In this document: positions 4,596 to 63,420 of the stretch, piece after piece | Numbering within the stretch: position 1 is the first letter of the stretch | Layout: every line of letters begins with the position of its first letter | Assembly: GCF_006345805.1 (NCBI RefSeq) | Contig: NC_043004.1 | Location: 93,496,001 to 93,560,000, forward strand | Direction of reading: 5' to 3' | DNA: 64,000 nt | From: Octopus sinensis | Lineage: Eukaryota | Made by a program: the position numbers and the translations under genes | Notes under the pieces: generated by a model | The model's input: the letters and a program-made list of their open reading frames with translations, nothing else | Told to the model about the DNA's origin: nothing | The model's database searches: none

Positions 4596-5018
4596 GAGTG
4601 GCTGTGTGGTAAGTAGCTTGCTTACGAACCACATGGTTCCGGGTTCAGTCCCACTGCGTGGCACCTTGGGCAAGTGTCTTCTACTATAGCTTCGGGCCGA
4701 CCAAAGCCTTGTGAGTGGATTTGGTAGACGGAAACTGAAAGAAGCCCGTCGTATATATGCATGAATACATATATATATATGTGTGTGTGTGCGTTTGTGT
4801 GTGTGTGTTTGTCCCCCCTAGCATTGCTTGTTTTACAACCGATGCTGGTGTGTTTATGTCCCCGTTCCTTAGCGGTTCGGCAAAAGAGAATGATAGAATA
4901 AGTACTGGGCTTACAAAAAGAATAAGTCCCGGGGTCGAGTTGCTCGATTTAAGGCGGTGCTCCAGCATGGCCGCAGTCAAATGACTGAAGCAAGTAAAAG
5001 AGTAAAAGAGTAAAAGAG
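4596..5018 (+). mobile_element. SINE family A
   Basis: Full-length match to the other copies. Confidence 0.9.
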
Positions 5019-5214
5019 AGAGTATACAAGGAAAGGAAACTGGGACAGATGACACCGACCAGCTTGTCGGCATTCAAACAAAATGAGAATACTATTTACA
5101 TTGCCCCCCCCCCACCACTCTTTACATGTATAAGGGCAATGACAGATGCATCCGTTAAAAAAGATGTCTTATCGAAACACATTGACATAACATCATAAAA
5201 CAGTTGTTTAGTTA

Positions 5215-5600
5215 TAGGAGCACTCCGTCGGTTGCGACGATGAGGGTCCCAGCTGATACGACCAACGGAACAGCTTGCTCGTGATATTAACGTGCAAGTG
5301 GCTGAGCACTCCACAGACACGTGTACCCTTAACGTAGTTCTCGAGGAGATTCAGCGTGACACACAGAATGTGACAAGGCTGGCCCTTTGAAATACAGGTA
5401 CAAGAGAAACAGGAAGAAAGAGCGAGAGAAAGTTGTGGTGAAAGAGTACAGCAGGGTCCACCAATACCCCCTGCCAGAGCCTCGTGGAGCTCTAGGTGTT
5501 TTCGCTCAATAAACACTCACAATGTCCGGTCTGGGAATCGAAACCGCGATCCTCCGACCGCGAGTCCGCTGCCCTAACCACTGGGCCATTGTGCCTCCAC
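5215..5600 (-). mobile_element. tRNA-derived SINE, family B (about 380 bp)
   Basis: Head GGAGGC(G/A)CAATGGCCCAGTGGTTAGGGCAGCGG, tail ...CGTCGTAACCGACGGAGTG; matches 19110, 21768, 27766. Confidence 0.9.
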
Positions 5601-8224: not shown

Positions 8225-9369
8225 TATTTGCGTAAATGCACCATGTATGTTTGTGTGTCTATCCATGACGTGTCTATGTGATTTCTGCTTAATCTTTATT
8301 ATAGGCATGCAACCTGAACAAAGAATGGACATAACAAGGACGGACGACACAAAACATGGGGTACATATAACGAAGGATAACTATGAAATGGAATGTTTAT
8401 AATGACTAGAATGGAATGGCTTACGAGCCCCACCAAAGCTCGCAGTTTCATCTTACTGTTCTTTTATGCAGTTTTATAATCTTTTTTAAAAAAATTTCTC
8501 GTCTGTTATAAACTTCATCAATTCTTCCTGTTCAACAACATTCGACAGACTCTCATAACGGACGTACACTCCTGTCTCTGTACGAGTTTATATAGTACGT
8601 AAATGGATAAGCGAGTGAAAGAGGGGAGAGATAGAGATGGAAAGGTATATAAAAACAAGCAGAGAGAAATGCAGACAGGTAAACTAAACGAATATAACTT
8701 TTTTCTCACGTGTGATGAAGAAAACAGGTTAACACCCCTACATAAAAGGGCGTTAATAGGTTCGCCCAGTATTATATATAAAAACAGCTGCCTTTAAGGC
8801 GATAACAAACGAAGATAGACGAAGAAAAGGCAAATCTAGGTAAAAGTCAAACGAATGCCAACAAGAAAATGAAACAAGTTGTTTCTGTCGTTTGCTCAAA
8901 AGTGATTGAGCGGGCTATGATGTCATAATTCAAAGTGATTTTTGACCTTTCGGTCAGCAAAGTAAGAAATAAGGAAAGAATAAAAATACAGAGAAGGGAA
9001 AAAGAAAAAAAAAAAAAGAAAAGGGGAAGAAACTGAAGGAGTGAAAGGAAGAAAAAGAAGGAAGAAGAATCTATTGCTGCTGCTGCTGCAGCTATGATAG
9101 TTTAGTTGACAAATCCCTCTGAAGCTACGAATCCAGCCAAAACTATTTCGTGATCAGCACCAAGCAATACTTGTGATAAAATTTTAGTAGCAATATAAGA
9201 ACATGTTGCAGAATGGTTTTGTTAATAACTTTCAAGGTGAGACCCATTCCCGCACACTTTACCTATTATTGTTCCGCAGTCAATAAAATAAAGTACCGGT
9301 CAAGTACTGGGGACGATGGTATTGACTAACACCTCCCTTCAAACTGATTACTTTGTACCTAAATCAGAA

Positions 9370-9404
<35 letters not shown>

Positions 9405-9774
9405 GGATCTTTTCGGTTTGAACGGCAGTTTTTTCTAGCGGTGTCATATGAAATTGTCACCTATAATTATGACCCTAGTATCGATCTATTGCATTTCAAT
9501 CTGTTTTAGGGTTAGGGTTAGGGTTTTTCTTCACAAATGTAAATAAACCCAATCTGTTTCTTAAACGAGGGACATTCATACGACATAGAATTTTTTTTAC
9601 CTCAATAGACGTCACTGATTGGTTGAAATTGCAGAAATTGAAGTAAAACAACAACAAATATCTTACAAACTATAGAATTTTCTCAATAAAGCCACGAGAA
9701 AAAGTATACGAAGTTTTAAATTTTTTAGTTACCAAGAAATTATGTTAAAAACTGCCGTTCAAACCGAAAACATC

Positions 9775-9775
<1 letters not shown>
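9405..9775. mobile_element. MITE with 28-bp TIRs inserted in an (ATT)n tract
   Basis: GGAT(C/G)TTTTCGGTTTGAACGGCAGTTTT TIRs with 1 mismatch; internal (TTAGGG)3. Confidence 0.8.
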
Positions 9776-9821
<46 letters not shown>

Positions 9822-9859
9822 TATTATTATTATTATTATTATTCAGTAGACTTATTTTT

Positions 9860-10075
9860 ATCGCATGTTCTCCACTTTACTACGAGTGCAGCTCTGTGAA
9901 CCTTGGGTTCGTGCTGTTTATTATTTTTTTTTCATTATTTGTTCGGTGTTACAGTACCTAGCAGTGTTATTTTCCGTATGTTATATATACTTGCTAACCC
10001 AGGATTGGATTGTTTTTGCTTGCATGTTTTTGATCATACCTTGGCACAGTTTCTATTTCTGGTTCTACATTCGAG
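9860..10075 (-). mobile_element. R4/Dong-like (RLE) non-LTR 3' remnant
   Basis: Minus strand ...IRKITLLGTV..., similar to the 62900-63100 copy. Confidence 0.4.
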
Positions 10076-10569
10076 TAACTTCTATTTTCGTTCTGGGTTC
10101 AAATTCCATGAAAGTCGACTGCCTTTCACCTTTCGGGTTCGATAAAATAAGTACCAGTCACATATTGGGGTCAATCGACTTCTCTCTCCCCTCAAAAACT
10201 GCTGACCATAAGCCAAAATTATTATTATTATTATTATTATTATTATTGACTACTTTTTAATGTAAATTTTGTGCCTTACAGCAACCGAAAATAATCATGA
10301 TGCTGTCGGCCTTTTTCCAAGACAAGGTACTACAAATTTCCATTAAGCGTTAAACATCCGGTTGAACCTCGACTTCCGGTTGACATTGATGTCTACATCC
10401 CTTCTAATTTATTAATCAGAAATTGTTTCTATTATGGCATTTCGATATTATTCTGACTTTGAATTGTCTATAGTTAGGAGACGAATTCTCTTCAGATGAT
10501 ATGCCATTCAATGTTTACTGTCAGGTTTGAAACTTATAGTAATGGCAAAAGTAGTCAAATAACAATGAA

Positions 10570-10611
<42 letters not shown>

Positions 10612-10772
10612 TAAACCAAATATGTGCATTTCCAAACGAATTATTTTCAGTACAGCTATAGCTGACTTTGACATTTTTTTATCAAATAATTCATCGTACT
10701 TATTTATTTCTAAGAGGTTTCTACCAATAGCTGGCCTTTCATTTAAAGCTAAAGAGAGCGTTGAAACAATTT

Positions 10773-11616
10773 CTATTTTCTTCGTTGTTAAATTTGAATG
10801 ACAAAAAAAAACTACGCTTACGTTTATACCCAATTTCTCTAAAACCTCATAATAATTGTCAGCTTCATTTGACGAAAGGGTAGATACTTAGTTGCTATAA
10901 AATTTCTAAAATAAAACGGGTGGTGTTTAGTTGAAATTCTACTCAATCTACATAAGTTGGTAATTCGAGTTTCTGTAACGTTGATATTTACATGTCTTCC
11001 TCTAAGTTTAACATAAAATGTTGACTATGGTTATTAGTGGTTGTTATATTGTCGAAACGTAGCTTAGATGTGGCTTTTAGATAATTCCTAATCTAATTTT
11101 GGACTGGAAATTGTACTAAAAGGAAAGGCCATACTGACATCAAACGGGTCAGTATGAGCCTCGCTTTTATGAAACTGAAGTATGTGGTTTGAATGGAATA
11201 TACGTTGTAAATATACCCAAAAGAAAATTCAAAATCTTAAAAGCATGACTAGATTGTGGCCTTTCCTTTTAGTACAATTTCCAGTCCAAAATTAGATTAG
11301 GAATTATCTAAAAGCCACATCTAAGCTACGTTTCGACAATATAACAACCACTAATAACCATAGTCAACATTTTATGTTAAACTTAGAGAAAGACATGTAA
11401 ATATCAACGTTACAGAAACTCGAATTAACAACTTATGTAGATCGAGTAGAATTTCAACTAAACACCACCCGTTTTATTTTAGAAATTTTATAGCAACTAA
11501 GTATCTACCCTTTCGACAAATGAAGCTGACAATTATTATGAGGTTTTAGAGAAATTGGGTATAAACGTAAGCGTAGTTTTTTTTTTGTCACTCAAATTTA
11601 ACAACGAAGAAAATAG
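10773..11616. repeat. Long inverted repeat: about 360-bp arms, 125-bp spacer
   Basis: 10773-11131 versus 11257-11616; about 7 differences counted by eye. Confidence 0.95.
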
Positions 11617-12075
11617 TTGTATGTATGTATGTATGTATGTATGTATGTATGTATGTATGTATGTATGTGTGTATGTATGTATGTATGTATGTGTGTATGT
11701 ATGTGTGTATGTATGTGTGTATGTATGTGTGTATGTATGTGTGTATGTATGTGTGTGTGTATGTATGTGTGAGTATGTATGTGTGTGTGTATGTATGTGT
11801 GTGTATGTATGTGTGTGTGTATGTATGTGTGTGTATGTATGTGTGTGTGTATGTGTGTGTATGTATGTGTGTGTATCTATGTGTATATGTATGTGTGTGT
11901 GTATGTATGTGTGTGTATGTGTGTATGTATGTATGCATGCATGTATGTATGCATACATGCATGTATGCATGTATGTATGCATGTATGTATGCATGTATGT
12001 ATGCATGCATGTATGTATGCATGTATGTATGTATGTATGTATGTATGTATGTATGTATGTATGCATGTATGTATG
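11617..12075. repeat. Compound (TATG/TGTG/CATG)n microsatellite
   Basis: Direct inspection. Confidence 0.98.
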
Positions 12076-12606
12076 TTCGTACTCTTCTATCACTAATTAT
12101 ATGAAAGCTTCCTGTAAGGAAGGATCCGGCTTCTAACAAAGATGCGAAATTACATCATTGGCATGTAGATATTAACAAATTTGAGAAAAGTCTTGCATAC
12201 ATTTACTGTTCCGCTTACAGATTGTATTTGTAATGGGTGTCAGCTGGTTGGTTTCTTTTTCTGAAGACCTCATCTTTTAGATTGTCACTTCGGCATTTTA
12301 CTCACAAAACAAAGTTTGCCAATTATTATTAGAATAAATGCGAATTTGTAATTTAGGCATACAAGCTGAAGGCTTCAAAGAAATTGCCCATAGTTATACT
12401 TTTCTCTTTGATTTTCGAAGAGATCTTGACATCAGCAGAGCCGCTAACCTCTATGACGGTACATACTTTTATTGTCCGTTGCAAACCATCCGATCTGTTA
12501 GGCTTGCACTTGGTAGAAGTTTTGATTGGAATATTCTGCCTATTCTACCTAATTCCAATCACTGTTGTGACCATTTTAAAATCACGACTGATAAGAGAGA
12601 TTGTTT

Positions 12607-12952
12607 TGTACATACATACATACATACATACATACATACATACATACATACATACATACATACATACATACATACATACATACATAATACATAATACATA
12701 CATAATACATAATACATACGTACATACATACATAATACATACGTACATACATACATCATACATACATACATACATACATCATACATACATACATACATAC
12801 ATACATACATACATACATAGTATGTACATACATAGTATGTACATACATACATACATACATAGTATGTACATACATACATACATACATACATACATACATA
12901 GTATGTACATACATACATACATACATACATACATACATAGTATGTACATACA

Positions 12953-12986
<34 letters not shown>

Positions 12987-12988
12987 CA
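12607..12988. repeat. (CATA)n microsatellite with CATAGTATGTA interruptions
   Basis: Direct inspection. Confidence 0.98.
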
Positions 12989-13411
12989 TTACGTACGTGC
13001 GTCCATAAGTTTCAGGGATAATTACAAAAATACCGAAGTGCTAGAAACTTATATTTTGGTGATTGAATGGGAGTTTAACAAGAGGCTGGCGAGTACGTTT
13101 AGGCCCACCCTACCCTGCAAATTATTCTGGAGACTAACTCGGCCAAGAGAAATGCTAGTAATCTTGTCGGCTGGACTTTGAGCCATAATATTGGGGAAGA
13201 TCTCGGGACTATACCTCCTTTGCCCGTTCAGGTTCGTGGAACGAATTTGTCGATGAGAAATGTCAAATTCCGGGTTCCTTTATGACCTTTGAACTAGAAT
13301 TACAACGTGGTTTTAGAAATGATAGATATCTCTTATGGACTCCCTTCAAGAAAGAGGAGCAGATAAGTATATATGAATTATATAGTATTACCTATGTAGC
13401 AATTGGCTGTG

Positions 13412-13446
<35 letters not shown>

Positions 13447-13608
13447 AGTTTTACATATTGTAAGCTGTGCGTGTAAGTATGTGTGTGTGTGTGTGTGTGT
13501 TTGGGGTGAAATTGAAAGGGAATAATTCTTGTAAGTGATCCGATTTTTTTCGTGTTTGGTTTGATATTTCTGTCCCTCTCATTGGACTTTGATGATGATA
13601 TTTCTCAG

Positions 13609-14119
13609 GCACATTGTCAAGACGAGAATCCAGATTGCGCGAGCGAAGGAGGAGGAGGAGGAGGAGAAGAAGAAATCGAGCGAAATCACAGAGAAGGAGA
13701 AGGCATATTGCCAGAATGCGACAGGCATGTACCAAACCTTTCTCTCCCTTCCGCCCTTTCCACCCACGTTGGTCTGTAAGAGGCTATAAACATTTAGCAT
13801 CACGTCCCACCATCATGTCACGACCAACGATCCGAAGGCGGCAGCCTGTACACGGCCGTGGAGGATTTGACGTTAATCATAGAAGACGTAAAATAGATGG
13901 CCACAATCATCGTCAAGCTTGTCCGTTTACATTGAGACCTAGGTTTCGTCATCGTCATGATCGTATGAGTCCTCTGAAACATAGACTATCCAGGATGGAT
14001 CACATCATATATTGGGACATAGACAACTGGAGTAGGTTCTTTGAAAAGCTGAAGTTTCTCTTGCCTCCGAATACCTTCGTATGGGGCTTTCATAGTACCC
14101 AATGGAACCAGCCAACCAG
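13609..14119 (+). CDS. First recognisable coding exon of a PIN/NYN-like (ZNF451 PIN-type) gene: Arg/His-rich region followed by the start of the PIN domain
   Basis: Acceptor tttctcag ends at 13608; frame open from 13599; first in-frame ATG 13716; encodes ...MDHIIYWDIDNWSRFFEKLKFLLPPNTFVWGFHSTQWNQPT; donor AG|GTAATG at 14120 (phase 2). True start codon uncertain. Confidence 0.8.
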
Positions 14120-14279
14120 GTAATGAACTCGTGTTAAAGCTTTTTTTAAGTGTGAGAGGGTGTCTGGCTAAATGAAATGCAATTTTTGGTTCTGTCTCTT
14201 AAAGTTCTGTGCTCAGATCTCGCTGGAATCAGAGTGATTTCTCTTAGCCCATTTCTATTCTTTTATTTCTTTTGTTTGT

Positions 14280-14505
14280 TTCAGTCATTTGTTGTTTCAG
14301 TCATTTGACTGCGGCCATGCTGGAACACCACTTAGAAAGATTTTAGTCGAACAGATCGAGCCCGGGACTTACTTTTAAAGCCTAGTACTTATTCTATCAA
14401 TCAATTTTGCCGAACCGCTAAATTACTGAGACGTAAACACACCAACACCGGTTGTCAAGCGGTTATGGGTGGGGGGACAAATACAGACACACACACACAC
14501 ACACA

Positions 14506-14556
<51 letters not shown>

Positions 14557-14728
14557 ACACATATACACGGCGGGCTTTCAGTTTCCTTCTACCAAATCCA
14601 CTCACAAGACTTTGGTCAGCCCGACGTTATAGTAGAAGGCACTTGCCCAAGGTGCCATGCAGTGGGACTGAACCCGGAACCGTGTGGTTGGAAAGCAAGC
14701 TTCTTACCACACAACCACGCCTGCGCCT
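14280..14728 (-). mobile_element. SINE family A variant in a PIN-gene intron
   Basis: Family A body with expanded (CA)n. Confidence 0.85.
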
Positions 14729-14989
14729 TTAAATAATGTAAATTACTTAGGTGATAAATGTGTTCTCCTCATTTGTATATGTCTTAAGCTCTTTGGCTAC
14801 TGGAGATAAAGTTGGGCAGTTGTCGTGCTGATAACAGCTATTGAACCAGAACCAGAAATGCAAGTCCACGCCTGTTCTTTTACAACTTATCAATAAACTT
14901 CATCCCTTCCTTAATGGCATGCCAATTGTAGAAGATTCTTGAATCTTGCGATTACCTCCACTGCTCAAATGGAGCTTGTATGACTATAG

Positions 14990-15208
14990 CAGTGCTTTTC
15001 AAGCTTTTTGCTGGAGCGGAACCCCAAGAAAATATTCCACTGGCTCGAGGAACCCCTGTGCAATAATTTAATAGTCTTATGCACATATATCTGCACAGGA
15101 GAATTAAAAATTACTGTCGATTTTAGCATTTTTGTAACTTCTTGCGGAACCCCTGGACTTTACTGGCGGAACCCCAAGGTTCCGCGGAACCCTGGTTGAA
15201 AACCACTG
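14990..15208. mobile_element. hAT-superfamily MITE
   Basis: TIRs CAGTGCTTTTCAA / TTGAAAACCACTG and a perfect 8-bp TSD GACTATAG (14982-14989, 15209-15216). Confidence 0.9.
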
Positions 15209-15554
15209 GACTATAGTTTGGGCAGGAACTGCCTAATTTTTTCATCCAGACGGTTCGTACCTGATATGTACTCGTGTGCGCGCACAAACAGATGAATACG
15301 TGTCGGTTATTGTGTGATAAAAGTGGGTATACATATGTTCGAATATATGTGCATGTATACATGTATATACATACATATATATAGATATGCATTTGGGTGC
15401 GTTTATGATTCAGTTTTATCAATCGATCGATCGATTGATCGACAGAACATATAGGAAACGACCCTCATAATGGATATCTACTCCGAAGCCGAAACAAATC
15501 AACTACTAAAGGGAAAGGGATTATGTACGTACGTATGCATATGTAACAAATGTG

Positions 15555-15876
15555 AAGGAGCGTGGCTTAGTGGTTAGAGCATTCGGCTCACGATCTTACG
15601 ACCGTGAGTTCGATTCCAGACCGCGTTGTGTTCTTGAGCATTTATACCTCATTTCACATTGCTCCAGTCCACTCAGCTGGCAAAAATTGAGTAGTACCTA
15701 TAATTCATAGGGCCAGTTTTATCACGTTCTGTGTCACGCTGAATCTCCCCGAGAACTACACGTTAAGGGCACGCGTGTCTGTTGAATGCTCAGTCATTTG
15801 CACGTTAATTTCACGAGTAGACTGTTCCGTTGATCGGATTAATTGGAACACTCGCCATCGTACCCGACGGAATGCC
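15555..15876 (+). mobile_element. Chimeric SINE: family D head and core with a family B 3' part
   Basis: 5' part matches 19712-19840; 3' part matches 19340-19490. Confidence 0.75.
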
Positions 15877-15891
15877 ATTTATGTCATGTAC

Positions 15892-15946
<55 letters not shown>

Positions 15947-15964
15947 ATATATATACACACATAC

Positions 15965-16125
15965 ATACCTTCGTATGGGGCTTTCATAGTACCCAATGGA
16001 ACCAACCAACCAGGTAATGAACTCGTGTTAAAGCTTTTTTAAGTGTGAGAGGGTGTCTGGCTAAATGAAATGCAATTTTTGGCTCTGTCTCTTAACGTTC
16101 TGTGCTCAGATCTCGCTGGAATCAG
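15965..16125 (+). repeat. Dispersed copy of 14071-14232 (exon end, donor and intron start)
   Basis: 161 versus 162 bp; 3 substitutions and 1 indel. Confidence 0.95.
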
Positions 16126-16439
16126 TATATATGTGCATACGCGTATATTATAGTTGTATATATATATATACGTACAGTTCGATGCAACCCTGAAAAGCTG
16201 GTTCACCAGTCAGCAATATTAGACTGTGGACGGCATAATGGAATAGGGATTTTATTTGCATAAATTCAGTTGTGTGTGTGTGAAATATACATGAAGATCA
16301 TCACACACACACCAAAACAATAAAACTTTGCTATTTGATAAGAGCTTTATCTAGTTGAAGAATCCGAAACTTCAAGCATTTTCAACTTGTGTCTGTGGTC
16401 ATACCACACTTTAGATACATGCGGTCTTGTTGGCCAACA

Positions 16440-17060
16440 CATGGAAGGCATTCGGAAACAAAAATTCAATATCGCCAATATCAGTTTTTATGGAGATGAG
16501 AGATTAACTGAAAACTACACCTGGCAATAGCATACATTTGATAAATTTAAAAAGGAACTTAGTAGCGTTTGCAAACAGCTGGGATTAAAAATCATAATCA
16601 ATATCAAACTTAAGACAGCTAATTTATTGGACGTCACACTTAGACAACAACATGTATAAATCTTATAACGAACTAAAGCATAAATAGGGATTCTTGCCAC
16701 TGCCCCATATATAGTTTTTCAGAACATAGTTAAAATCATTGGTACAAGTATCTCCAAACTCTTTTCTTGTAGAGAGAATTTTGTTAGAAAATGAATTCCG
16801 CTATAATAGCGCCTTTCTTAATAGCTGTTTCAAAGATGGGATTAAATGCATATCTCGTCCACCAACACTCAATATGATATTAGGCCCCATAATGCAATCT
16901 TGCTCACTCTCATTTTCCTTTAAGCATAAAAATAAATAACGATAAAATATTCCCAGCATGTATTAGGAGTTCTGTTATAAAACCGTGTCAATAAAAGTTG
17001 CTTGAAAGTGACCTACAATAGTATTAATATGAAAAACATATTCTCTCAGAAAATACTAAC
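16440..17060 (+). mobile_element. Penelope-like element RT remnant
   Basis: FDKFKKELSSVCKQLGLKIIINIKLKTANLLDVTL, YNSAFLNSCFKD, KVTYNSINMKNI; stops and frameshifts present. Confidence 0.7.
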
Positions 17061-17437
17061 ATCCACCACTGAAATGCACTTATAGGTCACACGGAAACAT
17101 TTTCACGTGTTCAAAGGCTCAGAATGTTTCAAAGCACGCTATAGCTTGCATGTGAAGCTGTTAGAGTTCTGGCATTCTAAATCATCATCATCAGATTTGT
17201 TCAGAAGAACCTCTTAATCTTGTGACAACGGATGGCTACACCAGCATTATATACGATGCGATACCAGAAAGAACTTCTGAGAACTTTGTTCGTATACAAA
17301 TGAATTTTTTAATAATTATGTTATGAATGAAACTTTGAAGTAACAAAATCACTATCCCCCTTCTGCTCTATCAATATATATAATGTATATACATGGACAC
17401 TCATACAACTATATATATATATAAGTATAATGATAAT

Positions 17438-17515
<78 letters not shown>

Positions 17516-17821
17516 GGATAAAATCTTAAAATTTTTATAAGGTAAGCCAGAATATAATAAACCATATAGGTAACAATTAATACAAGTTTATATAATTATA
17601 TAAATATAATTATAATAACAAGGGCACTCATGAATAGCCCCACATGCTAGAAATAGACGTCAAATGGCTCTCAGAATTAGCACGGATTGAAAAGCAAGGA
17701 AAGAAATCGATCTATGGTTAAACTTTTTTTAAAATCTTATTTACTTACTTTCCTCGCTTTCAATCCGTACTAATAGAGTAAATAATTGTAGTTCTTATAT
17801 ATATATAAATTTTTCTTTCAG

Positions 17822-17921
17822 GTGCCTGGCGTTTCACCGGCTGATATCTACTGGGGGATTTCACAAGAATTATCAAAGTGGCAGGACGAAAAATGCAGCA
17901 GATTTTGCCATGATGCTTCAA
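17822..17921 (+). CDS. Middle exon of the PIN/NYN-like gene: (R)CLAFHRLISTGGFHKNYQSGRTKNAADFAMMLQ
   Basis: Acceptor ttttctttcag, 100-nt exon with phase 2 in and phase 0 out matching its neighbours, donor CAA|GTGAGA; KNAAD motif typical of NYN/PIN. Not in the ORF track. Confidence 0.9.
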
Positions 17922-18027
17922 GTGAGATGAAACCCGACTCACGGTTATGTTTTTTGTTGCTATTTCGTGATCACTGTATGGGCGCGAGTATGGTGTTTCG
18001 TTAAGAAGTTTGTTCTATATCATATAA

Positions 18028-18463
18028 CTAGCAGCATATAAGAGCCCCTAGTAGGCAACGACTAATCCCAATCTAGTCCTTTCCCTCTAGGGAACGAAGG
18101 CGCGTGTGTAGGTTGCAATGTCTTCTCTTCACTCGAATACTTCTGTGTATACGATGTTCCTAGCTGTCCCTTTGGGCGAAAACATGAAAACATCATTGCA
18201 CCTCCCAATGCGTGAACAGCCCACGTACAGCCCAGAAAATGTGTTGCATATAAAAAGCTTAGATTCTCGACCCCATGTCGAATTTATCGATTTTTTCAGA
18301 ACTGGGGGAACTTTTCAAAATTTTCGCTGCGTTAGTTTTGAATTATGACATTGGGCTATGTGCGTGTCAAGTTTCATCAGAATCGGTTCCAAGCCGTGGT
18401 CAGGGTGAGGGTACAACCTGACAGACACACAGACGGACAAACTGCCGTTTATATAGAGAGAGA
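18028..18463 (-). mobile_element. Non-autonomous Helitron
   Basis: Minus strand TCTCTCTCTATATAAACGGCA start (as at 3671) and TGCTAG|T end. Confidence 0.7.
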
Positions 18464-18485
18464 TATAATATATATTATAATATAA

Positions 18486-18777
18486 CTAGCAGTAGCGCCC
18501 GGAATTGCTCGGGTTTGTAAGGGAAATAACTATATAAGCATTTTTAGAGAGTTATTTCCCTTATATAAACCGAGCAAAAAATGCATTAAAAAGCGAAAAA
18601 ATGATGGTAATTTTTTTTTAAATCGTAGACGCGCGCTAATACCCAGAAGGGTTCGATATGAATCACGACTATCAGATACCCGCTTTTGGTTGAACTGCAC
18701 CACAAAATGTGGGAGTTGTTAGGAATCTAAATCGGAGGAGACAGACTCTCACACAACTTCAGTTTTATATATAAAGA
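18486..18777 (-). mobile_element. Second non-autonomous Helitron, in tandem with the first
   Basis: TC start; CCCGAGCAATTCCGGG hairpin; CTAG|T end. Confidence 0.75.
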
Positions 18778-19109
18778 TATAATATAATATATAATATAAT
18801 ATGATATTCGATTTATACGTTAGAAGCAACACCGTAGTAAAACTTAATCAATATAACATAATTGTGTGTGAGAGTATGGTTAAAAAGCGCTTCCGTTTCG
18901 CCAAAGACTGAAGTATATTGTGTTTAACATAAATCTATACTGCGTATTTTTATCCGAACGAAAGCTGCTGCCTTTGGCTTTTTGCATTCATACATACTTT
19001 AAGTCTGCTATATTGAGAAAGGTTTTACTATAGAGCTCTTTCTATTGCATAATTCGAATTCTATTTCGCTTATGCGGGCCTTTGCGAACCAATGTATGGT
19101 TCATACTGT

Positions 19110-19493
19110 GGAGGCGCAATGGCCCAGTGGTTAGGGCAGCGGACTCGCGGTCATAGGATCGCGGTTTCGATTCCCAGACCGGGCGTTGTGAGTGTTTATT
19201 GAGCGAAAACACCTAAAAGCTCCACGAGGCTCCGGCAGGGGATGGTGGTGATCCCTGCTGTACTCTTTCACCACAACTTTCTCTCACTCTTACTTCCTGT
19301 TTCTGTTGTACCTGTATTTCAAGGGGCCGGCCTTGTCACTCTCTGTGTCACGCTGAATATCCCCGAGAACTACGGTAAGGGTGCACGTGTCTGTGGAGTG
19401 CCCAGCCACTTACACGTTAATTTCACGAGCAGGCTGTTCCGTTGATTCGGATCAACCGGAACCCTCAGCGTCGTAACCGACGGAGTGCTTCCA
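19110..19493 (+). mobile_element. SINE family B
   Basis: Full-length match. Confidence 0.9.
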
Positions 19494-19711
19494 CATTTCG
19501 ATGCATAGAATTGGTAATATTACTGTAATTCATTGTGTTTTTGTTTTTATTCGCTTAGAGATCAGTTGGACTTCTGCTGCTGCTACAGTACTTCCGGATT
19601 CTATCTTGAATTTCTGCCCCTCAAAAGTAGTATCCATGAAATAGTCGACCCCATAAATTTGACCTTAAAAAATGGCCCTAAAAATTTCAATTTTTACAGG
19701 TGGCTTCTTTG

Positions 19712-19945
19712 TGGTTAGGGTGTCAGCGTCATGATCGTAAGATTGTGGTTTCGATTCCTGGACCGGACGAAGCGTTGTGTTCTTGAGCAAAACACTTCAT
19801 TTCACGTTGCTCCAGTCCACTCAGCTGGCAAAAATGAGTAACGCTGCGATGGACTGGCGTCCCGTCCAGCTGGGGAACACATACACCATTGAAACCGGGA
19901 AACCGGATCCATGAGCCTGGCTAGGCTTTAAAAGGGCGCATTTAT
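19712..19945 (+). mobile_element. SINE family D
   Basis: tRNA-like head, TTGTGTTCTTGAGCAAAACACTTC core, GCGATGGACTGGCGTCCCGTCCAG block. Confidence 0.75.
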
Positions 19946-20191
19946 ATATTGTTATTTATATACGGTAAATAAGGTTGCTACGACAGAATTGGTTTGGGAA
20001 GCACTGCTTTATATCACTGGGTGGGGGTGGGGCGAATGCGGAGGATATGTGCTGCATAAAAGTGTTACACTATGGGGAATTCTAAGTCTCCGCGTTCTAA
20101 ACAGCCATATCTGCGATGACATAGATAGCAAACTATGTCAATCTGGACTTCTAGTAGCATAGCTAGTGAGGATGGAGGACGGCCCTCCGTG

Positions 20192-20610
20192 TGTACTCTT
20201 TACTCTCTTACTCTTTTACTTGTTTCAGTCATTTGACTGCGGCCATGCTGGAGCACCGCCTTTAATCGAGCAACTTGACCCCGGGACTTATTCTTTTGTA
20301 AGCCCAGTACTTATTCTATCGGTCTCTTTTGCCGAACCGCTAAGTAACGGAGACATAAACACACCAGCATCGGTTGTCAAGCAATGCTAGGGGGACAAAC
20401 ACACTCACACAAACACACACACGCATATATATATATACATATATACGACGGGCTTCTTTAGGTTTCCGTCTACCAAATCCACTCACAAGGCTTTGGTCGG
20501 CCCGAGGCTATAGTAGAAGACACTTGCCCAAGGTGCCACGCAGTGGGACTGAACCCGGAACCATGTGGCTGGTAAACAAGCTACTACCACACATTCACTC
20601 CTGCGCCTAT
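20192..20610 (-). mobile_element. SINE family A
   Basis: Full-length match. Confidence 0.9.
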
Positions 20611-20879
20611 GCGCCTATGTGACGCATTTATTTTCTAAGTTTCTTTTACGTTCTAAGTTCAAATCCCAGAGACTAACCATTCGTCTTTCCGAGATTGATA
20701 AAATAAAATGCCAATAAAGTACTGTGGTTGATTTACTCTATTGTTACTGTCCTCCAAATTAAAGATCTTGTGACCTCCTAAAGCCGTGTCTTTAAATTCT
20801 CAATGTGTCCTTTCCTTTGCTACTAAACTTAGCTGTTTAATCATTTTATTGTTAAAACCGACCTTGCTTTTCTCTGTAG

Positions 20880-21062
20880 ATTGGCAAGATGGACGAGCTG
20901 CTTCCGAAACATGTCCAATTCACAATATTTTCTGGCGACAAAGGGTTTCAAGAAGCTCTTCATCAAATGAAGAATTCAAGAAGAACGATAAGAATAATAA
21001 ATCCACACGTTCCTGGCTGGCAAGCAAGACTTCACTGTATTTTGAACAGGACCATTCCTTGA
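20880..21062 (+). CDS. Last coding exon of the PIN/NYN-like gene: IGKMDELLPKHVQFTIFSGDKGFQEALHQMKNSRRTIRIINPHVPGWQARLHCILNRTIP*
   Basis: Acceptor gcttttctctgtag, phase 0, TGA at 21060-21062. DELLPKHVQFTIFSGDKGF...INPH closely resembles the ZNF451 PIN segment as I recall it (approximately DEQLPK.IPFTILSGD.GF...LNPH). Confidence 0.9.
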   Translation: MGKMDELLPKHVQFTIFSGDKGFQEALHQMKNSRRTIRIINPHVPGWQARLHCILNRTIP

Positions 21063-21279
21063 ATCCGATGGCACAGGCCCAAGAAACTTACTATATTGGC
21101 ACCAAATACATACGGGTTTTTTCATGATTTCTCAGCCTTCATTATTTTCATTTTCAAAAGGTTAAAAAAAACTGAACCCACCCAACGGCTTCGTTCTTTA
21201 TTTATTGTTTTACATGCATTGACACACACACACACACACACGCGCGCGCGCGCACTGAGATTTATTTAAAAAACATTTT

Positions 21280-21767: not shown

Positions 21768-22151
21768 GGAGGCGCAATGGCCCAGTGGTTAGGGCAGCGG
21801 ACTCGCGGTCATAGGATCGCGGTTTCGATTCCCAGACCGGGCGTTGTGAGTGTTTATTGAGCGAAAACACCTAAAGCTCCACGAGGCTCCGGCAGGGGAT
21901 GGTGGTGATCCCTGCTGTACTCTTTCACCACAACTTTCTCTCACTCTTACTTCCTGTTTCTGTTGTACCTGTATTTCAAAGGGCCGGCCTTGTCACTCTC
22001 TGTGTCACGCTGAATATCCCCGAGAACTACGTTAAGGGTACACGTGTCTGTGGAGTGCTCAGCCACTTACACGTTAATTTCACGAGCAGGCTGTTCCGTT
22101 GATTCGGATCAACCGGAACCCTCATCGTCGTAACCGACGGAGTGCTTCCAG
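21768..22151 (+). mobile_element. SINE family B
   Basis: Full length; CAACCACAC on both sides (TSD-like). Confidence 0.9.
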
Positions 22152-26149: not shown

Positions 26150-26900
26150 CATACAACCATTCTTTGGAATGATTACGGAGGAAAACGGGGAGAGCAAAAT
26201 TGCTCCCCACAAACGAAGTAATAAACTTGACTAAAGAAAGGACAATTATCTATAAGACTTATGATGTTATTAACAAAATATTAGAACAATTTGAGGAAAG
26301 CACAATCGAAAAATGCCTTGGATCAGTGATGAAACAAATGGACATATGGCTCTTCTGCCATTATATCTGGGACGTAGAACATCCCAGATAAGAAAAAAAT
26401 ATTCTACCGGAGGTGGAGGTCGCGTGGATTGTGGCCGCTCTCTTATTTGAGAGAGAAGAAAAGATAAACATCATCCAGATTTCCAGAGACGCTCCACAGA
26501 ATTGGAGGTGACAGACTCTGGAAATTCTGGCACAGGCCACGTCCATCGACCTCGAAAACCTCCTCGAGAAAATTCACATCGGAGAGGAAACCGTGCTCTT
26601 TTATTTGAGAGAGAAGAAAAGATAAATATCATCCAGATTTCCAGAGACGCTCCACAGAATTGGAGGTGACAAACTCTGAAAATTCTGGCAAAGGCTACGT
26701 CCATCGACCTCGAAAACCTCCTCGAGAAAATTCACATCGGAGAGGAAACCGTGCTGGCAGTATATGTGAAGGGGAGAAGACCCAGGTGTTTCAAATGTGG
26801 CAAAAAGGGACACCTGAGATCCAAGTGCTCGCCTATACAGAAGGACGCTGAGGGGAAAAAGACTCCAGAAGAGGAGGGAAATAAAGAGGCGTACTCAGCC
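26150..26900 (+). mobile_element. Decayed L1/Tx1-like ORF1 with CCHC zinc knuckle and a 158-bp tandem duplication
   Basis: GRRPRCFKCGKKGHLRSKC; 26440-26597 repeated at 26598-26755. Confidence 0.7.
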
Positions 26901-27199
26901 CAGCAAGCAACTTATCCAGATTCAAACAGTCTACTGTTCGTGACTCATTTCACATGGAGTCAACAGCGAATATACAACCTGCATGAGCTCCTGTACAAGT
27001 GACCCAGGCAGCAGTATCACAGCCACGCCTTCACGGACGACATGTACCTGTAACCGGCTCAGCATCATAGCCACAACTTCTTGATACAGTATTTCAACTA
27101 CCGTGTACGTCTGGTTACAAACTGGTATTATCTTCCTTGTGTCTATGAACTTCTGGCTTCGATGGCTATAAACGTTTTCCCTATTTTCTTTTTTAGCCA

Positions 27200-27370
27200 T
27201 CGGCTGTGTGGTAAGTAGCTGGCTAACCAACCACATGGTTCCGGGTTCAGTCCCACTGCGTGGCATCTTGGGCAAGTGTCTTCTACTATAGCCCCGGGCC
27301 GAACAATGCCTTGTGAGTGGATTTGGTAGACGGAAACTGAAAGCAGCCTGTCGTATATATGTATATATAT

Positions 27371-27417
<47 letters not shown>

Positions 27418-27635
27418 TGTATGTGTGTGTTTGTGTGTATGTGTTTGTCCCCCTAGCATTGCTTGACAACCGATGCTGGTGTGTTTATGTCCCCATTACT
27501 TAGCGGTTCGGCAAAAGAGACCGATAGAATAAGTACTGGGCTTACAAAGAATAAGTCCTGGGGTCGATTTGCTCGACTAAAGGCGGTGCTCCAGCATGGC
27601 CGCAGTCAAATGACTGAAACAAGTAAAAGAGTAAA
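27200..27635 (+). mobile_element. SINE family A inserted in LTR-B
   Basis: Full-length body. Confidence 0.9.
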
Positions 27636-27765: not shown

Positions 27766-28084
27766 CCAGACCGGGCGTTGTGAGTGTTTATTGAGCGAAA
27801 ACACCTAAAGCTCCACGAGGCTCCGGCAGGGGATGGTGGTGATCCCTGCTGTACTCTTTCACCACAACTTTCTCTCACTCTTACTTCCTGTTTCTGTTGT
27901 ACCTGTATTTCAAAGGGCCGGCCTTGTCACTCTCTGTGTCACGCTGAATATCCCCGAGAACTACGTTAAAGGTACACGTGTCTGTGGAGTACTCAGCCAC
28001 TTACACGTTAATTTCACGAGCAGGCTGTTCCGTTGATCGGATCAACCGGGACCCTCATCGTCGTAACCGACGGAGTGCTTCCAC
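27766..28084 (+). mobile_element. 5'-truncated SINE family B with an 11-bp TSD
   Basis: TATCGCATCAA at 27755-27765 and 28085-28095. Confidence 0.9.
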
Positions 28085-29140: not shown

Positions 29141-29155
29141 AAAATATAATTTCCT

Positions 29156-31109
29156 ACTCTGCTTAATGCAGAGCTGAAGATTTTGGCCAAGGTACTAGCA
29201 AAAAGATTGGCGCAGGTCGTGGGTAGACTTGTCGGTGAGGCACAAACCTGTGCAGTCCCGGGCCGGTCCACACACGACAATCTCCATCTTATACGCTATA
29301 CCTTAGAGCGGGTTAATAGGGTATCTGGCAAGGGCGGGGCGCTGGTACATTTAGACCAGGCTAAATTTTTCGATAAGGTCGACCATCGGTATCTGATGAC
29401 GGTTCTTGCGGCAGTTAGGCTGGGCCCGATCTTTCGCGTTTCGATCATAGCTTTATACAGCATCAATGACTCGATCGTTCGAGTGAACGGTTTCTTTTCG
29501 GAGCCGTTCTCTATCAAGCGCTCAGTTCGTCAAGGATGTCCGCTCTTCCCTCTTCTGTATGTGCTGGCTCTTGAGCATTTATTGCGGAAGTTAGAGAGTA
29601 TGAGTGGCGTCCCGCGAGATCTAGGTTGTGGAAGATCAGTAACGGCGTACGCGGATGATATCACCATCATCGTATCTGAGGCGTGACACCGACAGTGGTA
29701 GGTGAAGCCGTTAAAGAATATGAGGTGGTGGCAGGAGCAAAAATCAACCGGGAAAAGTCAGTCGGCTTGCAGCTCGGCACTTGAAGAGGCAAATGGATGC
29801 CGTCCAACAACGGCCCAGTGAAAATGCTCGGGGTCTGGTTTGGGCCAGACCTCCAGTTAGAGAAAAATTGGAGCGAGGTCACAAGCAGGGCGGCCCATCT
29901 AACCCAGACCTGGTTTGGGCGATGGCTATCCCTGAAAGGAAGGGCGAAGGTTGCAAATGTGTTTATCACATCTGTGATCACATACCGCCTGACTGTCGTG
30001 CTTCCACTTTTTGTGGAAGGGCAGAGGACCTCTTGTAAGGCAATCTATCTGTTGCCAACAACCACTAAAGGGTGGGCTAGGGATGCCGTAGCTGATGATG
30101 CGCAAGCACGCGCTGAGGTTAAGGCATATTTGGCTTTACCTGAATGTTGAACGGGTGTGGTCTCCGTTCGTCAAACTGTTATTTCTTAGACTCACTAGTT
30201 TTAGTGAACTAGAACCATGGATCAAACGTAGACCAAATTTGGGTGCTTGGCAGGCCGAGTGTCGCAAGGTCCTCGCGCTCTTCTGTCGCACGGGCAATAC
30301 TGGTAGCGTAGGTTCCACCTCGTCGTTCTATAGAGGGTTAGTAGAGGACAAGTGTGATGATGCGCTGGGGGAAACCCTGGGCTTCGACGAAGGTCAAACA
30401 GCCATCTTGTTCCAAAATACGTTCGGGCCTGGCAATCTTACCGAGGAGCCTTACCAGTTTACGATAAACTCGCAAAGCATGGTGCCTCATGCTTACCCAC
30501 CTGCCCAGAAGTGGGCGGGACAGTGAAACTGTTCCGCACGCAATTTGGCAGTGTGCGAGGATTTCAGAGTTGTAGGTTTACGTCTAACGACTGCTGTGAC
30601 GGCTTGGAAGAGTACAGTTGTCGTCCGAGTCTGTGATAAACATTATACCACCTCCCTCTCTGAACAGAGTAGGTAAGGTTTGTTTGCTCATTGTGGTCGC
30701 TATAGCGTAAGGGGCAATATGGAAGACAAGGACGAAAGGATTTGTGACAGTCTCTTTCATTTCTGGCCAATATTTGTTCAACTTTTTTATCTTCCTGCTA
30801 TGAAGGAAGATAAGGCTAGAAAGGAAGTGCGTCGGACATGTACGGTAAAAGATAGAAGCAAGTGGGAATGAAAGGTCCTACGTGAGTGCATCCATAAAAG
30901 GTAAATAAGAAGGCTCAGTGGAGGAACGTGTCTTGCGGGGTCGTAACCGTTCCCCCACTCCGTTGCACTGTTTTATTGTCTGTCTTTTCATTGCTTATAT
31001 TCATAGATTTTTTAACTTCATTTTTGTGTAATCACATTCGTTACCCTGACCCCGCATTCATTTTTGTATTGTTCCTCTGTGGTTGGCCCTTGTGGCTTGA
31101 ATAAAATTC
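29156..31109 (+). mobile_element. 5'-truncated Tx1/L1-clade LINE (decayed ORF2 RT and 3' UTR) with a 15-bp TSD
   Basis: TLLNAELKILAKVLAKRL...RQGCPLFPLLY...YADDITI; AATAAA near 31100; TSD AAAATATAATTTCCT at 29141-29155 and 31110-31124. Confidence 0.92.
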
Positions 31110-31397
31110 AAAATATAATTTCCTTCCACTAACGCCATATGCTACTTCATTTGATCTAAATAATTTCCGCTTACCGATTTGTTTCCATGTTTTTACATTT
31201 ATGGTAGTGATGCCACTACCTGAGTCTAATTGCATTTTGACACTTGTCGTTTCGATCTTCACCTTGACGAATTTTCTGTTTGTATTAACTTTTTTTTCTG
31301 CTGACAAATTATTTTTTTCTCGGTGTGATTTAATATGTCCTGTATTCCCATAACAAAAGCACTTCGCTTTTTGAATGCACAATCCTTCCTCAGGAAG

Positions 31398-63110: not shown

Positions 63111-63171
63111 TAACCTGCTACCCACATAAATCCTACCAGGAATAAGACCAAACATGAGCCAAATCAATACT

Positions 63172-63386: not shown

Positions 63387-63420
<34 letters not shown>

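What the first reader, a model, noticed from the sequence alone, without database searches (positions are those of the whole stretch)
13609..21062. Hidden spliced gene: stand-alone ZNF451-type PIN/NYN domain behind a very basic Arg/His-rich leader
Seen: three exons with canonical GT-AG sites and compatible phases (2, then 0) splice into a 228-aa ORF from ATG 13716; two exons are absent from the ORF track. The domain keeps the acidic motifs WDIDN, KNAAD and SGDKGF. Established: DxxN, KxxxD and SGD motifs mark NYN/LabA-type PIN ribonucleases, and vertebrate ZNF451 (SUMO E3 ligase acting with TDP2 on TOP2 adducts) ends in such a domain. Inference: with no zinc fingers upstream in this window and a leader rich in R and H (RPTIRRRQPVHGR...RPRFRHRHDR), this may be an uncharacterised nucleic-acid-binding PIN nuclease.
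Basis: partly seen in the sequence, partly recalled or inferred. Interest (0 to 1): 0.75.

Follow-up and report, generated by a model that had tools for sequence, protein, structure and literature searches.

The report
Octopus stand-alone ZNF451-type PIN gene
This is a real, spliced octopus gene for a small, very basic protein made of an arginine-rich leader plus a ZNF451-type PIN (PIN_11) nuclease-like domain; it is a zinc-finger-less side copy of ZNF451, is already predicted in databases, and its biochemical activity, like that of every PIN_11 domain, is still untested.

Summary
The three exons (13716-14119, 17822-17921, 20880-21062) have GT-AG borders and phases 2 then 0. They splice to 228 aa, which match Pfam PIN_11 end to end (E 1e-37).

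The model is incomplete and the gene is not hidden. A 5' exon (about 8827-9236) carries an in-frame ATG at 9203, so the full ORF is 275 aa. An in-frame TAG at 9188 excludes any further upstream coding exon.

The window is Octopus sinensis chromosome CM016866.1. There NCBI annotates only a 140-aa 'ZNF451-like' isoform. O. bimaculoides already has the 275-, 228- and 217-aa isoforms (LOC106868266; UniProt 'ZNF451 PIN-like domain-containing protein').

O. sinensis has a separate true ZNF451 elsewhere (781 aa, with SIMs, C2H2 fingers and PIN_11). That gene shares both intron positions and phases inside the PIN domain. The window gene is therefore a finger-less paralog, seen here only in octopods.

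All family-conserved acidic residues are kept (D148, D150, N151, D209, S233, D235). The predicted fold is confident and closest to the MARF1 NYN domain. The domain is under purifying selection (dN/dS 0.23). The leader is coding (all five indels in frame) but fast-evolving.

The nuclease function is plausible but unproven for the whole family. Interest is modest.

The parts
8827..9236 (+). 5' exon: about 376 nt of 5'UTR with short uORFs, in-frame TAG at 9188, start codon ATG 9203-9205, 11 codons plus 1 base, donor GT at 9237. The 5' end is approximate.
   Evidence: An octopus RNA contig (L001) aligns to 8827-9237 and then jumps to 13617. Sequence read. ORF and uATG list. The N-terminus is the same as O. 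bimaculoides isoform X1.
9213..9215 (+). Second ATG, +1 frame, in a stronger Kozak context. It is the start of the 140-aa NCBI isoform (MVLLITFK...). With the full exon 2 it gives only a 64-aa overlapping ORF.
   Evidence: the translation of 9213-9236 + 13609-13724 + exon 3 + exon 4 equals P0003 exactly.
13609..14119 (+). Coding exon 2 (511 nt): residues 12-182.
   Evidence: Indels against the octopus RNA contig are 6, 3, 9, 3 and 6 nt, all in frame.
13725..13726 (+). Alternative GC donor (GACAG|GCATGT) used by the annotated 140-aa isoform. That isoform skips the leader and beta1 and reads the purine tract in another frame (GGGGGGEEE).
   Evidence: exact match to P0003 = XP O. sinensis 'ZNF451-like'.
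17822..17921 (+). Coding exon 3 (100 nt): residues 182-215 with K205-N-A-A-D209 (D209 = 17901-17903). It is entered in phase 2 and left in phase 0.
   Evidence: The introns have the same positions and phases in the long ZNF451 gene.
17922..17943 (+). 22-nt extension from an alternative downstream donor (CACG|gttatg). It brings in a TGA and yields a 217-aa product ending MMLQVR, truncated after K205-N-A-A-D209 and lacking the exon-4 part of the domain (S233-G-D235).
   Evidence: The RNA contig L001 uses it. O. bimaculoides A0A0L8HW15 (P0153) has the same end.
20880..21062 (+). Coding exon 4: residues 216-275 with S233 (20931-20933), D235 (20937-20939), R250 and N-P-H258. The TGA stop is at 21060-21062. 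The 3'UTR continues to at least 21171.
15965..16125 (+). Intronic 162-bp copy (97.5% identical) of the 3' end of exon 2 plus its GT donor: a decoy donor inside intron 2. It is not part of the mature gene.
   Evidence: The segment is single-copy in O. bimaculoides.

Best explanation
Shown: the window (O. sinensis chr CM016866.1) carries a four-exon gene spanning 9203-21062. It encodes a 275-aa protein of pI about 12 with three parts:
- an arginine-run helix (residues about 13-50);
- a disordered Arg/His/Pro-rich stretch (about 51-130);
- a complete C-terminal PIN_11 domain (about 140-272).

It is a zinc-finger-less, SIM-less paralog of the molluscan ZNF451-type gene. Orthologs were seen only in octopods (O. 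bimaculoides, a market octopus RNA sample, Argonauta). It shares the ancestral intron positions inside the PIN domain, so it arose by a DNA-level partial duplication, not by retroposition.

Inferred: the domain is a metal-dependent (Mg2+/Mn2+) NYN-type endonuclease acting on single-stranded nucleic acid, most likely RNA. Its acidic residues D148, D150, D209 and D235 sit at the C-terminal ends of the parallel strands and at a helix N-terminus. The arginine-rich leader supplies nuclear or nucleolar targeting and non-specific nucleic-acid binding, in place of the fingers and SIMs of ZNF451. Alternative 5' splice sites (GC donor at 13725; +22 nt donor at 17944) and uORFs yield truncated, catalytically dead or NMD-prone products and probably keep protein output low.
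For: Gene model:
- Searches give the exons, the RNA contig and the upstream in-frame stop.
- Searches show identical 275-, 228- and 217-aa products annotated in O. bimaculoides.
- One search shows the window is 100% identical to the O. sinensis assembly.

Domain:
- PIN_11 scores 128.7-129.3 bits with full coverage.
- All highly conserved family columns are kept. D148 is conserved in 90 of 93 domains, D150 in 75 as D plus 13 as E, N151 in 87, D209 in 92, S233 in 89, D235 in 88, R250 in 89 and P257 in 89.
- The AlphaFold2 model has pLDDT above 90 over 133-272, with the strand and helix order of a PIN/NYN fold.
- The best Foldseek hits are the MARF1 NYN domains 5yaa and 6fdl, probability 1.0.

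Selection:
- dN/dS is 0.23 in the domain and 0.47 in the leader.
- Five of five exon-2 indels are multiples of three, against two of five in the 5'UTR exon.

Paralogy:
- The true ZNF451 of O. sinensis is 781 aa with SIM-like N-terminal motifs, C2H2 fingers and PIN_11, on another chromosome.
- Both genes have a phase-2 and then a phase-0 intron at homologous positions, with a middle exon of 100 versus 97 nt.
- The short genes form a 100/99 clade on a stem of about 1.0 substitutions per site inside a mollusc group.

Basic character: 50 Arg in 275 aa. The domain pI of 10.2 ranks 5th of 93.

Literature: PIN_11 was proposed as a potentially active nuclease with at least four conserved Asp (PMC5499597).
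Against: - No PIN_11 protein has a demonstrated nuclease activity.
- In vertebrate ZATT/ZNF451, the PIN-like plus UIM region makes only a modest contribution to TOP2cc repair in egg extracts (bioRxiv 10.64898/2026.07.14.738426). The domain was reported as a p300-binding surface (cited in PMC5499597).
- The family lacks the second Asp of the classical NYN SGDxDF motif (the consensus is SGDKGF). The Pfam NYN model is not reached (14.3-14.8 bits against a cut-off of 24.2).
- Model coordinates could not be inspected, so clustering of the Asp residues is inferred from secondary-structure positions only.
- The one RNA contig in hand carries the premature-stop isoform. No transcript or peptide of the 275-aa form from O. 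sinensis itself was found.
- Localisation and substrate are pure inference.
Confidence: 0.5

Rival explanations
1. Non-catalytic adaptor or regulator. The PIN_11 fold is used as a protein-binding module, as reported for ZNF451-p300. The free-standing octopod copy would compete with, or modulate, the partners of the long ZNF451. The conserved Asp residues would serve the fold or ligand binding, not catalysis.
For: - PIN_11 has no shown activity, and a protein interaction was reported (PMC5499597).
- The ZATT deltaCT mutant largely rescues repair (bioRxiv 10.64898/2026.07.14.738426).
- Both annotated isoforms of this gene and human ZNF451 isoform 2 drop strand beta1 with its Asp residues (PMC5499597). 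This suggests Asp-independent roles exist.
- The short domain is strongly diverged from the family consensus (128.7 versus 209 bits; stem about 1.0).
Against: Near-invariance of four acidic positions plus N151 and S233 across 93 domains from cnidarians to vertebrates, and their retention here after a long fast-evolving stem. This is what a metal site predicts and is more than a binding surface usually needs. A pI of about 12 and the Arg-run fit nucleic-acid contact better than a protein-protein decoy.
Confidence: 0.3
2. A decaying partial duplicate: a transcribed relic of a ZNF451 3' end whose transcripts are mostly nonsense isoforms, with no protein function.
For: - The only RNA contig has the +22-nt donor and a premature stop.
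- NCBI's O. sinensis model is a 140-aa product lacking beta1.
- Several uATGs precede the main ATG.
- The leader evolves quickly (dN/dS 0.47).
Against: - The ORF is intact over 275 codons in O. sinensis and O. bimaculoides. It is open through the leader and domain in a third octopus, and the domain is kept in Argonauta.
- Domain dN/dS is 0.23.
- All indels are in frame.
- All conserved residues are kept.
Confidence: 0.08
3. An ordinary ZNF451 ortholog whose finger and SIM exons lie further upstream, outside the reader's span.
For: The NCBI names ('E3 SUMO-protein ligase ZNF451 isoform X2', 'ZNF451-like') suggest it.
Against: - An in-frame TAG at 9188 lies in the 5' exon, upstream of the first ATG.
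- The RNA contig runs on with 5'UTR only.
- No C2H2 pattern is present in the 64-kb window.
- tblastn of the long ZNF451 finds only the PIN exons.
- A separate 781-aa ZNF451 with fingers exists on CM016877.1.
Confidence: 0.02

Closest known systems
Octopus bimaculoides LOC106868266 (XP_014768937.1 isoform X1, 275 aa; XP_052826038.1 isoform X2, 228 aa; UniProt A0A0L8HW07 / A0A0L8HW15 'ZNF451 PIN-like domain-containing protein')
   Same: Ortholog. It has the same four coding exons, the same 275-aa length, the same N-terminus MLQNGFVNNFQGTLSR and the same alternative +22-nt donor product. Identity is 92% over the 228-aa form (BLASTP): 130 of 135 domain positions (96%) and 80 of 93 (86%) in the shared part of the leader.
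   Different: Species. The window's arginine run is purer (R10, against RRKRRKRRR). In O. sinensis only a 140-aa isoform is annotated. These are computational predictions only, with no published study.
Pfam PIN_11 (PF18479), the C-terminal PIN-like domain of ZNF451/ZATT, defined by Matelska et al. 2017 (PMC5499597)
   Same: Full-length match far above the cut-off. The conserved Asp, Asn and Ser positions are kept. It has the 'minimised NYN' topology and lies at the C-terminus of the protein.
   Different: - There are no fingers, SIMs, coiled coil or UIM around it.
- The commonly conserved Cys/His positions (family H198, C201, C213) are N, S and M here, as in the octopus long ZNF451.
- The domain is unusually basic.
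- It scores lower than its long paralog.
ZNF451/ZATT, SUMO E3 ligase and TOP2cc repair factor (O. sinensis XP_029648111.1, 781 aa; vertebrate forms about 1060-1090 aa)
   Same: It shares the PIN_11 domain (about 40-48% identity) and the two intron positions and phases inside it.
   Different: The window protein has none of the parts shown to matter for SUMO ligase or TOP2 function (tandem SIMs, coiled coil, ZF1-4). The database name 'E3 SUMO-protein ligase' is therefore not justified for it.
MARF1 NYN domain (PDB 5yaa, 6fdl), an NYN-type domain
   Same: It is the best structural neighbour of the predicted domain (Foldseek probability 1.0, TM 0.5 on the target). Acidic residues sit at the strand ends.
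   Different: Only 13-16% identity. The Pfam NYN model is not reached. It has SGDKGF instead of an SGDxDF-type motif. The fold is smaller.
Other finger-less PIN_11 proteins, e.g. Nematostella vectensis A7SY93 (160 aa) and Dreissena polymorpha LOC127858457 (two PIN_11 domains)
   Same: Stand-alone PIN_11 architecture without C2H2 fingers.
   Different: They are not orthologs and sit in different parts of the tree. None has the arginine-rich leader.

Membership tests
PIN_11 (PF18479) | Match to the family HMM above the gathering score, over the whole model | tested here: met
   128.7-129.3 bits against a cut-off of 26.6. Profile positions 2-118 of 118 are covered.
PIN_11 (PF18479) | Conserved acidic and polar positions (DxDN, KxAAD, SGD) | tested here: met
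   D148, D150, N151, D209, S233 and D235 are all present. These columns are 81-99% conserved in 93 family domains.
PIN_11 (PF18479) | PIN/NYN-like alpha/beta fold | tested here: met
   AF2 pLDDT is above 90 over 133-272. The order is beta1-beta2-alpha-beta-alpha-beta-alpha-beta-alpha. The top Foldseek hits are MARF1 NYN.
PIN_11 (PF18479) | Embedded Cys/His residues proposed to bind zinc (Matelska 2017) | tested here: not met
   The family-majority H198, C201 and C213 are N, S and M in the window protein. C183 and H258 are kept. These columns are only 50-70% conserved, so this is not a strict criterion.
ZNF451/ZATT orthologs (SUMO E3 ligase) | C2H2 zinc fingers (ZNF451-specific finger models) | tested here: not met
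   There is no finger Pfam hit in the 275-aa protein and no C2H2 pattern in any frame of the window. The O. sinensis 781-aa protein and the frog ZNF451 do hit the ZNF451 finger models.
ZNF451/ZATT orthologs (SUMO E3 ligase) | N-terminal tandem SIMs and coiled coil | tested here: not met
   The N-terminus is an Arg-run with no acidic-flanked hydrophobic SIM cores. An in-frame stop upstream excludes more N-terminal sequence. tblastn with the long protein finds nothing but the PIN exons.
ZNF451/ZATT orthologs (SUMO E3 ligase) | Being the single ortholog in the genome | tested here: not met
   A separate 781-aa ZNF451 lies on CM016877.1. The window gene forms its own octopod clade.
NYN / LabA (PF01936) | Match to the NYN HMM above the gathering score | tested here: not met
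   14.3-14.8 bits against 24.2, E 0.04-0.06, covering only the KNAAD-SGD half. The relationship is at clan and fold level only.
Active PIN-like nucleases | Metal-dependent cleavage of nucleic acid, lost on Asp mutation | not testable with these tools
No PIN_11 member has been assayed in the literature searched.

The most novel reading that the evidence does not exclude
The octopod short gene is a naturally minimal, catalytically active PIN_11 ribonuclease. An arginine-rich motif has replaced the zinc fingers and SIMs and targets it to nuclear or nucleolar RNA. It would be the first PIN_11 protein with an assignable activity. It would also be a simple handle on what the enigmatic PIN-like domain of ZNF451/ZATT does in all animals.
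Probability: 0.25. Interest if true: 0.55.

Novelty: new member of a known kind. Interest (0 to 1): 0.3.

Why it matters
The biochemical role of the ZNF451/ZATT PIN-like domain is unknown, although it is conserved from cnidarians to humans and scored in a base-editor tiling screen for etoposide sensitivity. A small, finger-less paralog with every conserved residue intact is a convenient protein for asking whether PIN_11 is a nuclease.

Practically, the result corrects annotation. The O. sinensis locus is named an 'E3 SUMO-protein ligase' and modelled as a 140-aa product lacking the first strand. The conserved product is a 275-aa PIN_11 protein with no SUMO-ligase parts.

Beyond that it is an ordinary lineage-specific gene duplicate.

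Tried and rejected
- Exact-sequence look-ups of the window's 275-aa and 217-aa products in public assemblies found nothing. So there is no same-species transcript evidence. P0001 was not on record either.
- A profile search of the PDB by sequence gave no hit at E<=1.
- An alignment-seeded search of the 5.8-billion-protein set added almost nothing.
- NCBIfam gave no hit.
- A sister relationship of the short clade with the cephalopod long ZNF451 had SH-aLRT 90 in the quick 95-row tree. It collapsed into a mollusc polytomy in the careful 41-row tree, so the donor gene is not resolved.
- I looked for homology between the leader and the linker of the long ZNF451. There is none: similarity starts about 5 residues before beta1.
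None was found in the window or in L002.
- Searches for LOC106868266 and for PIN_11 literature gave nothing beyond Matelska 2017 and the 2026 ZATT preprint.
- Model coordinates are not exposed, so Asp-Asp distances could not be measured.


Full report
**1. Observation**

I read the three claimed exons and spliced them in a script. The exons are 13716-14119 (404 nt), 17822-17921 (100 nt) and 20880-21062 (183 nt including TGA). Together they give a 687-nt ORF of 228 codons.

The product matches Pfam PIN_11 (PF18479) at 129.3 bits (cut-off 26.6, E 1e-37). The match covers profile positions 2-118 of 118, so all three exons are needed to complete one domain. Weaker hits are the related PIN7 model (E 4e-6) and NYN (E 0.04, below its cut-off). 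This cannot be chance.

**2.

A homolog search returned four relatives:
- an identical 228-aa architecture from O. bimaculoides ('E3 SUMO-protein ligase ZNF451 isoform X2', 92% identity);
- a 140-aa O. sinensis 'ZNF451-like' protein;
- a 147-aa Argonauta hians protein;
- a 210-aa product from a 1411-nt Logan contig (L001).

L001 comes from run SRR3401912, an octopus meta-transcriptome (PMC11662614). It aligns to the window as four blocks: 8827-9237, 13617-14121, 17819-17946 and 20879-21171. So there is an upstream exon. Its donor is at 9236|gtgaga.

The ATG at 9203 is in frame with the PIN ORF through this junction. No exon further upstream can therefore add coding sequence to this transcript form.

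The 275-aa product is already in the databases for O. bimaculoides, as XP_014768937.1 ('uncharacterized protein LOC106868266 isoform X1') and UniProt A0A0L8HW07 ('ZNF451 PIN-like domain-containing protein'). A 217-aa isoform ending MMLQVR is also listed.

**3. Isoforms**

L001 and the 217-aa O. bimaculoides isoform both use a second donor, 22 nt downstream of the canonical one. In the window this is CACG|gttatg, so the exon runs to 17943. It brings in a stop after MMLQVR.

The 140-aa O. sinensis model equals, residue for residue, the translation of 9213-9236 + 13609-13724 + exon 3 + exon 4. This isoform differs in three ways:
- it starts at a second ATG 10 nt downstream, in the +1 frame;
- it reads the purine-rich tract as GGGGGGEEE instead of poly-Arg;
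- it leaves exon 2 through a GC donor (GACAG|GCATGT), skipping the leader and PIN strand beta1 with its two Asp residues.

The 5'UTR holds five short uORFs.

The window is 100% identical to O. sinensis GCA_006345805.1, chromosome CM016866.1. So the locus is annotated in this very assembly, only as the truncated form. 'Hidden' is not accurate. 'Under-annotated and misnamed' is.

**4. Is the leader coding?**

The reading frame is open from 9203 through the domain in O. sinensis, in O. bimaculoides and in the RNA contig's species. In a nucleotide alignment of exon 2 with the RNA contig, the five indels are 6, 3, 9, 3 and 6 nt. In the non-coding 5' exon they are 77, 6, 3, 1 and 8 nt.

dN/dS (Nei-Gojobori) is 0.47 for 130 leader codons and 0.23 for 135 domain codons. 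The leader is therefore translated but evolves fast, which is typical of a disordered basic region.

Composition:
- residues 1-139 hold 40 Arg, 10 His and 10 Pro;
- the whole protein has 50 Arg and a pI of about 12.

AlphaFold2, using a 39-sequence alignment, gave the following:
- residues 13-50 as one long helix (pLDDT about 95 in the Arg-run);
- residues 51-130 as disordered;
- residues 133-272 as a confident alpha/beta domain (pLDDT above 90).

**5. It is not the ZNF451 ortholog**

- No C2H2 pattern occurs in any frame of the 64-kb window.
- Pfam finds nothing but PIN_11, PIN7 and NYN in the 275-aa protein.
- An exhaustive HMMER search of 1.84 billion representatives found 165 relatives, nearly all with the domain at the C-terminus of proteins of 140-3050 aa.
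- Naming the best of them showed that O. sinensis and O. vulgaris have a separate 781-aa 'E3 SUMO-protein ligase ZNF451' (XP_029648111.1) on chromosome CM016877.1. Argonauta has a 752-aa one.
- The 781-aa protein has SIM-like N-terminal motifs, C2H2 fingers with a weak hit to the ZNF451 first-finger model, and a PIN_11 domain of 209 bits.
- tblastn of these long proteins against the window hits only the three PIN exons. Similarity starts about 5 residues before beta1.

**6. Origin**

In the long gene (locus L003), the PIN domain is interrupted by a phase-2 intron after W-F-P-P-K-(S) and a phase-0 intron before VGKMDE, with a 97-nt middle exon. The short gene has a phase-2 intron after W-N-Q-P-T-(R) and a phase-0 intron before IGKMDE, with a 100-nt middle exon. 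Positions and phases are the same. This points to a DNA-level partial duplication, not a retrocopy.

In domain trees, the short genes (window, O. bimaculoides, the RNA contig's species, Argonauta) form a 100/99 clade on a stem of about 1.0 substitutions per site. The clade lies inside a mollusc-dominated group that also holds the cephalopod long ZNF451s and bivalve proteins. A sister relationship to the cephalopod long genes had SH-aLRT 90 in the quick tree but is unresolved in the careful one. No decapodiform short ortholog appeared among the representatives. That is absence of evidence only.

**7. How it probably works**

I aligned 93 PIN_11 domains. The near-invariant columns and their counts out of 93 are:

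| Residue | Conserved in |
|---|---|
| D148 | 90 |
| D150 | 75 as D, 13 as E |
| N151 | 87 |
| D209 | 92 |
| S233 | 89 |
| D235 | 88 |
| F238 | 90 |
| R250 | 89 |
| P257 | 89 |

The window protein keeps every one of them.

On the predicted secondary structure, the key residues sit as follows:
- D148 ends strand beta1 (143-148);
- D150 and N151 follow in the loop;
- D209 opens helix 207-222;
- S233-G-D235 follows strand 228-232.

These are the positions where PIN/NYN nucleases place their metal-binding carboxylates. Foldseek's best PDB matches are the MARF1 NYN domains 5yaa and 6fdl (probability 1.0, TM about 0.5 on the target). The domain is also unusually basic (pI 10.2, 5th of 93, against a median of 8.7).

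My best reading is a metal-dependent NYN-type endonuclease whose arginine-rich leader provides nuclear or nucleolar targeting and nucleic-acid affinity. The nuclease step, the substrate and the localisation are inferences.

The literature offers no assay for any PIN_11 domain:
- Matelska et al. 2017 call it a potentially active nuclease and cite a p300 interaction.
- The 2026 ZATT preprint finds the PIN-like domain among the stronger-scoring domains in a base-editor tiling screen for etoposide sensitivity, yet a PIN-like+UIM deletion mutant still substantially rescued TOP2cc repair in egg extracts.

A non-catalytic adaptor or competitor role is therefore a serious rival (0.3). A decaying relic is unlikely given the selection data (0.08). 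The 'ordinary ZNF451 with distant finger exons' reading is refuted for the transcript seen (0.02).

**8. Comparison and novelty**

The gene is a member of PIN_11 by every testable criterion except the loosely conserved Cys/His positions. It is not a member of the ZNF451/ZATT orthogroup, because fingers, SIMs and single-copy status all fail.

Finger-less PIN_11 proteins exist elsewhere: Nematostella has a 160-aa one and Dreissena has a double-PIN_11 protein. Matelska et al. already noted that fusion to fingers is a feature of 'higher eukaryotes'. What is particular here is an octopod-restricted paralog with a new arginine-rich leader.

It is a new, computationally already predicted member of a known kind. 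Interest is modest at 0.3. Its main value is as a minimal test protein for PIN_11 biochemistry and as an annotation correction.

Noticed in passing
window 15965-16125 (copy of 14071-14232): A 162-bp, 97.5%-identical copy of the last 49 nt of coding exon 2 plus the GT donor and the start of the intron. It sits 1.9 kb downstream inside the same intron, preceded by TA/CA microsatellites. O. bimaculoides has this segment only once. It could act as a decoy donor, or it could be an assembly artefact.
   Followed up: partly
window 13630-13715: The purine-rich (GAG/AGG/GAA) tract is open in all three frames. Two annotated isoforms read it in two of them: poly-Arg in the 275-aa form and GGGGGGEEE in the 140-aa NCBI form. 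The third frame would give poly-Glu.
   Followed up: partly
window 25130-25062 (-); L002 24249-24181 (-): In O. bimaculoides a 361-aa syntaxin-5-like gene call on the opposite strand spans the whole PIN gene. Its first coding exon (MKDAHTLG...) maps to window 25130, but its GTAAGT donor reads ATAAAT in O. sinensis. No SNARE exon lies in the window. The antisense overlap is therefore probably not conserved.
   Followed up: partly
window 14292-14728, 20196-20611, and about 12 more copies (e.g. 2251-2660, 4596-5032, 27205-27634, 52470-52893, 53103-53500, 58211-58606, 59424-59839, 63168-63592): A roughly 400-bp SINE-like repeat family (72-95% identity between copies, both orientations) fills the introns and flanks. 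A second family of about 380 bp occurs at 19108-19493, 21768-22150, 27766-28084 and 5219-5600.
   Followed up: no
window 26670-26999 (+), 29150-30520 (+), 31044-31421 (-): Retroelement debris: a CCHC zinc-knuckle ORF, a reverse-transcriptase-like ORF run and an aspartic-protease-like (DSGS) ORF. None was scanned against Pfam.
   Followed up: no
window 45770-46033 and 46917-47180 (-): Two identical 88-aa ORFs 1147 bp apart, which indicates a recent tandem duplication or an assembly repeat.
   Followed up: no
P0170 (Partenskyella glossopodia MMETSP1318, 376 aa); P0016, P0034, P0054 (JGI/IMG metagenomes): Full PIN_11 domains turn up in a chlorarachniophyte transcriptome and in environmental metagenomes, although the family was described as specific to Eumetazoa. 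This is either contamination or a wider distribution.
   Followed up: no
P0005 / P0154 (Dreissena polymorpha LOC127858457, 523-559 aa); P0079: These proteins have two tandem PIN_11 domains and no zinc fingers. The two Dreissena domains are each other's closest relatives, which indicates an internal duplication.
   Followed up: no
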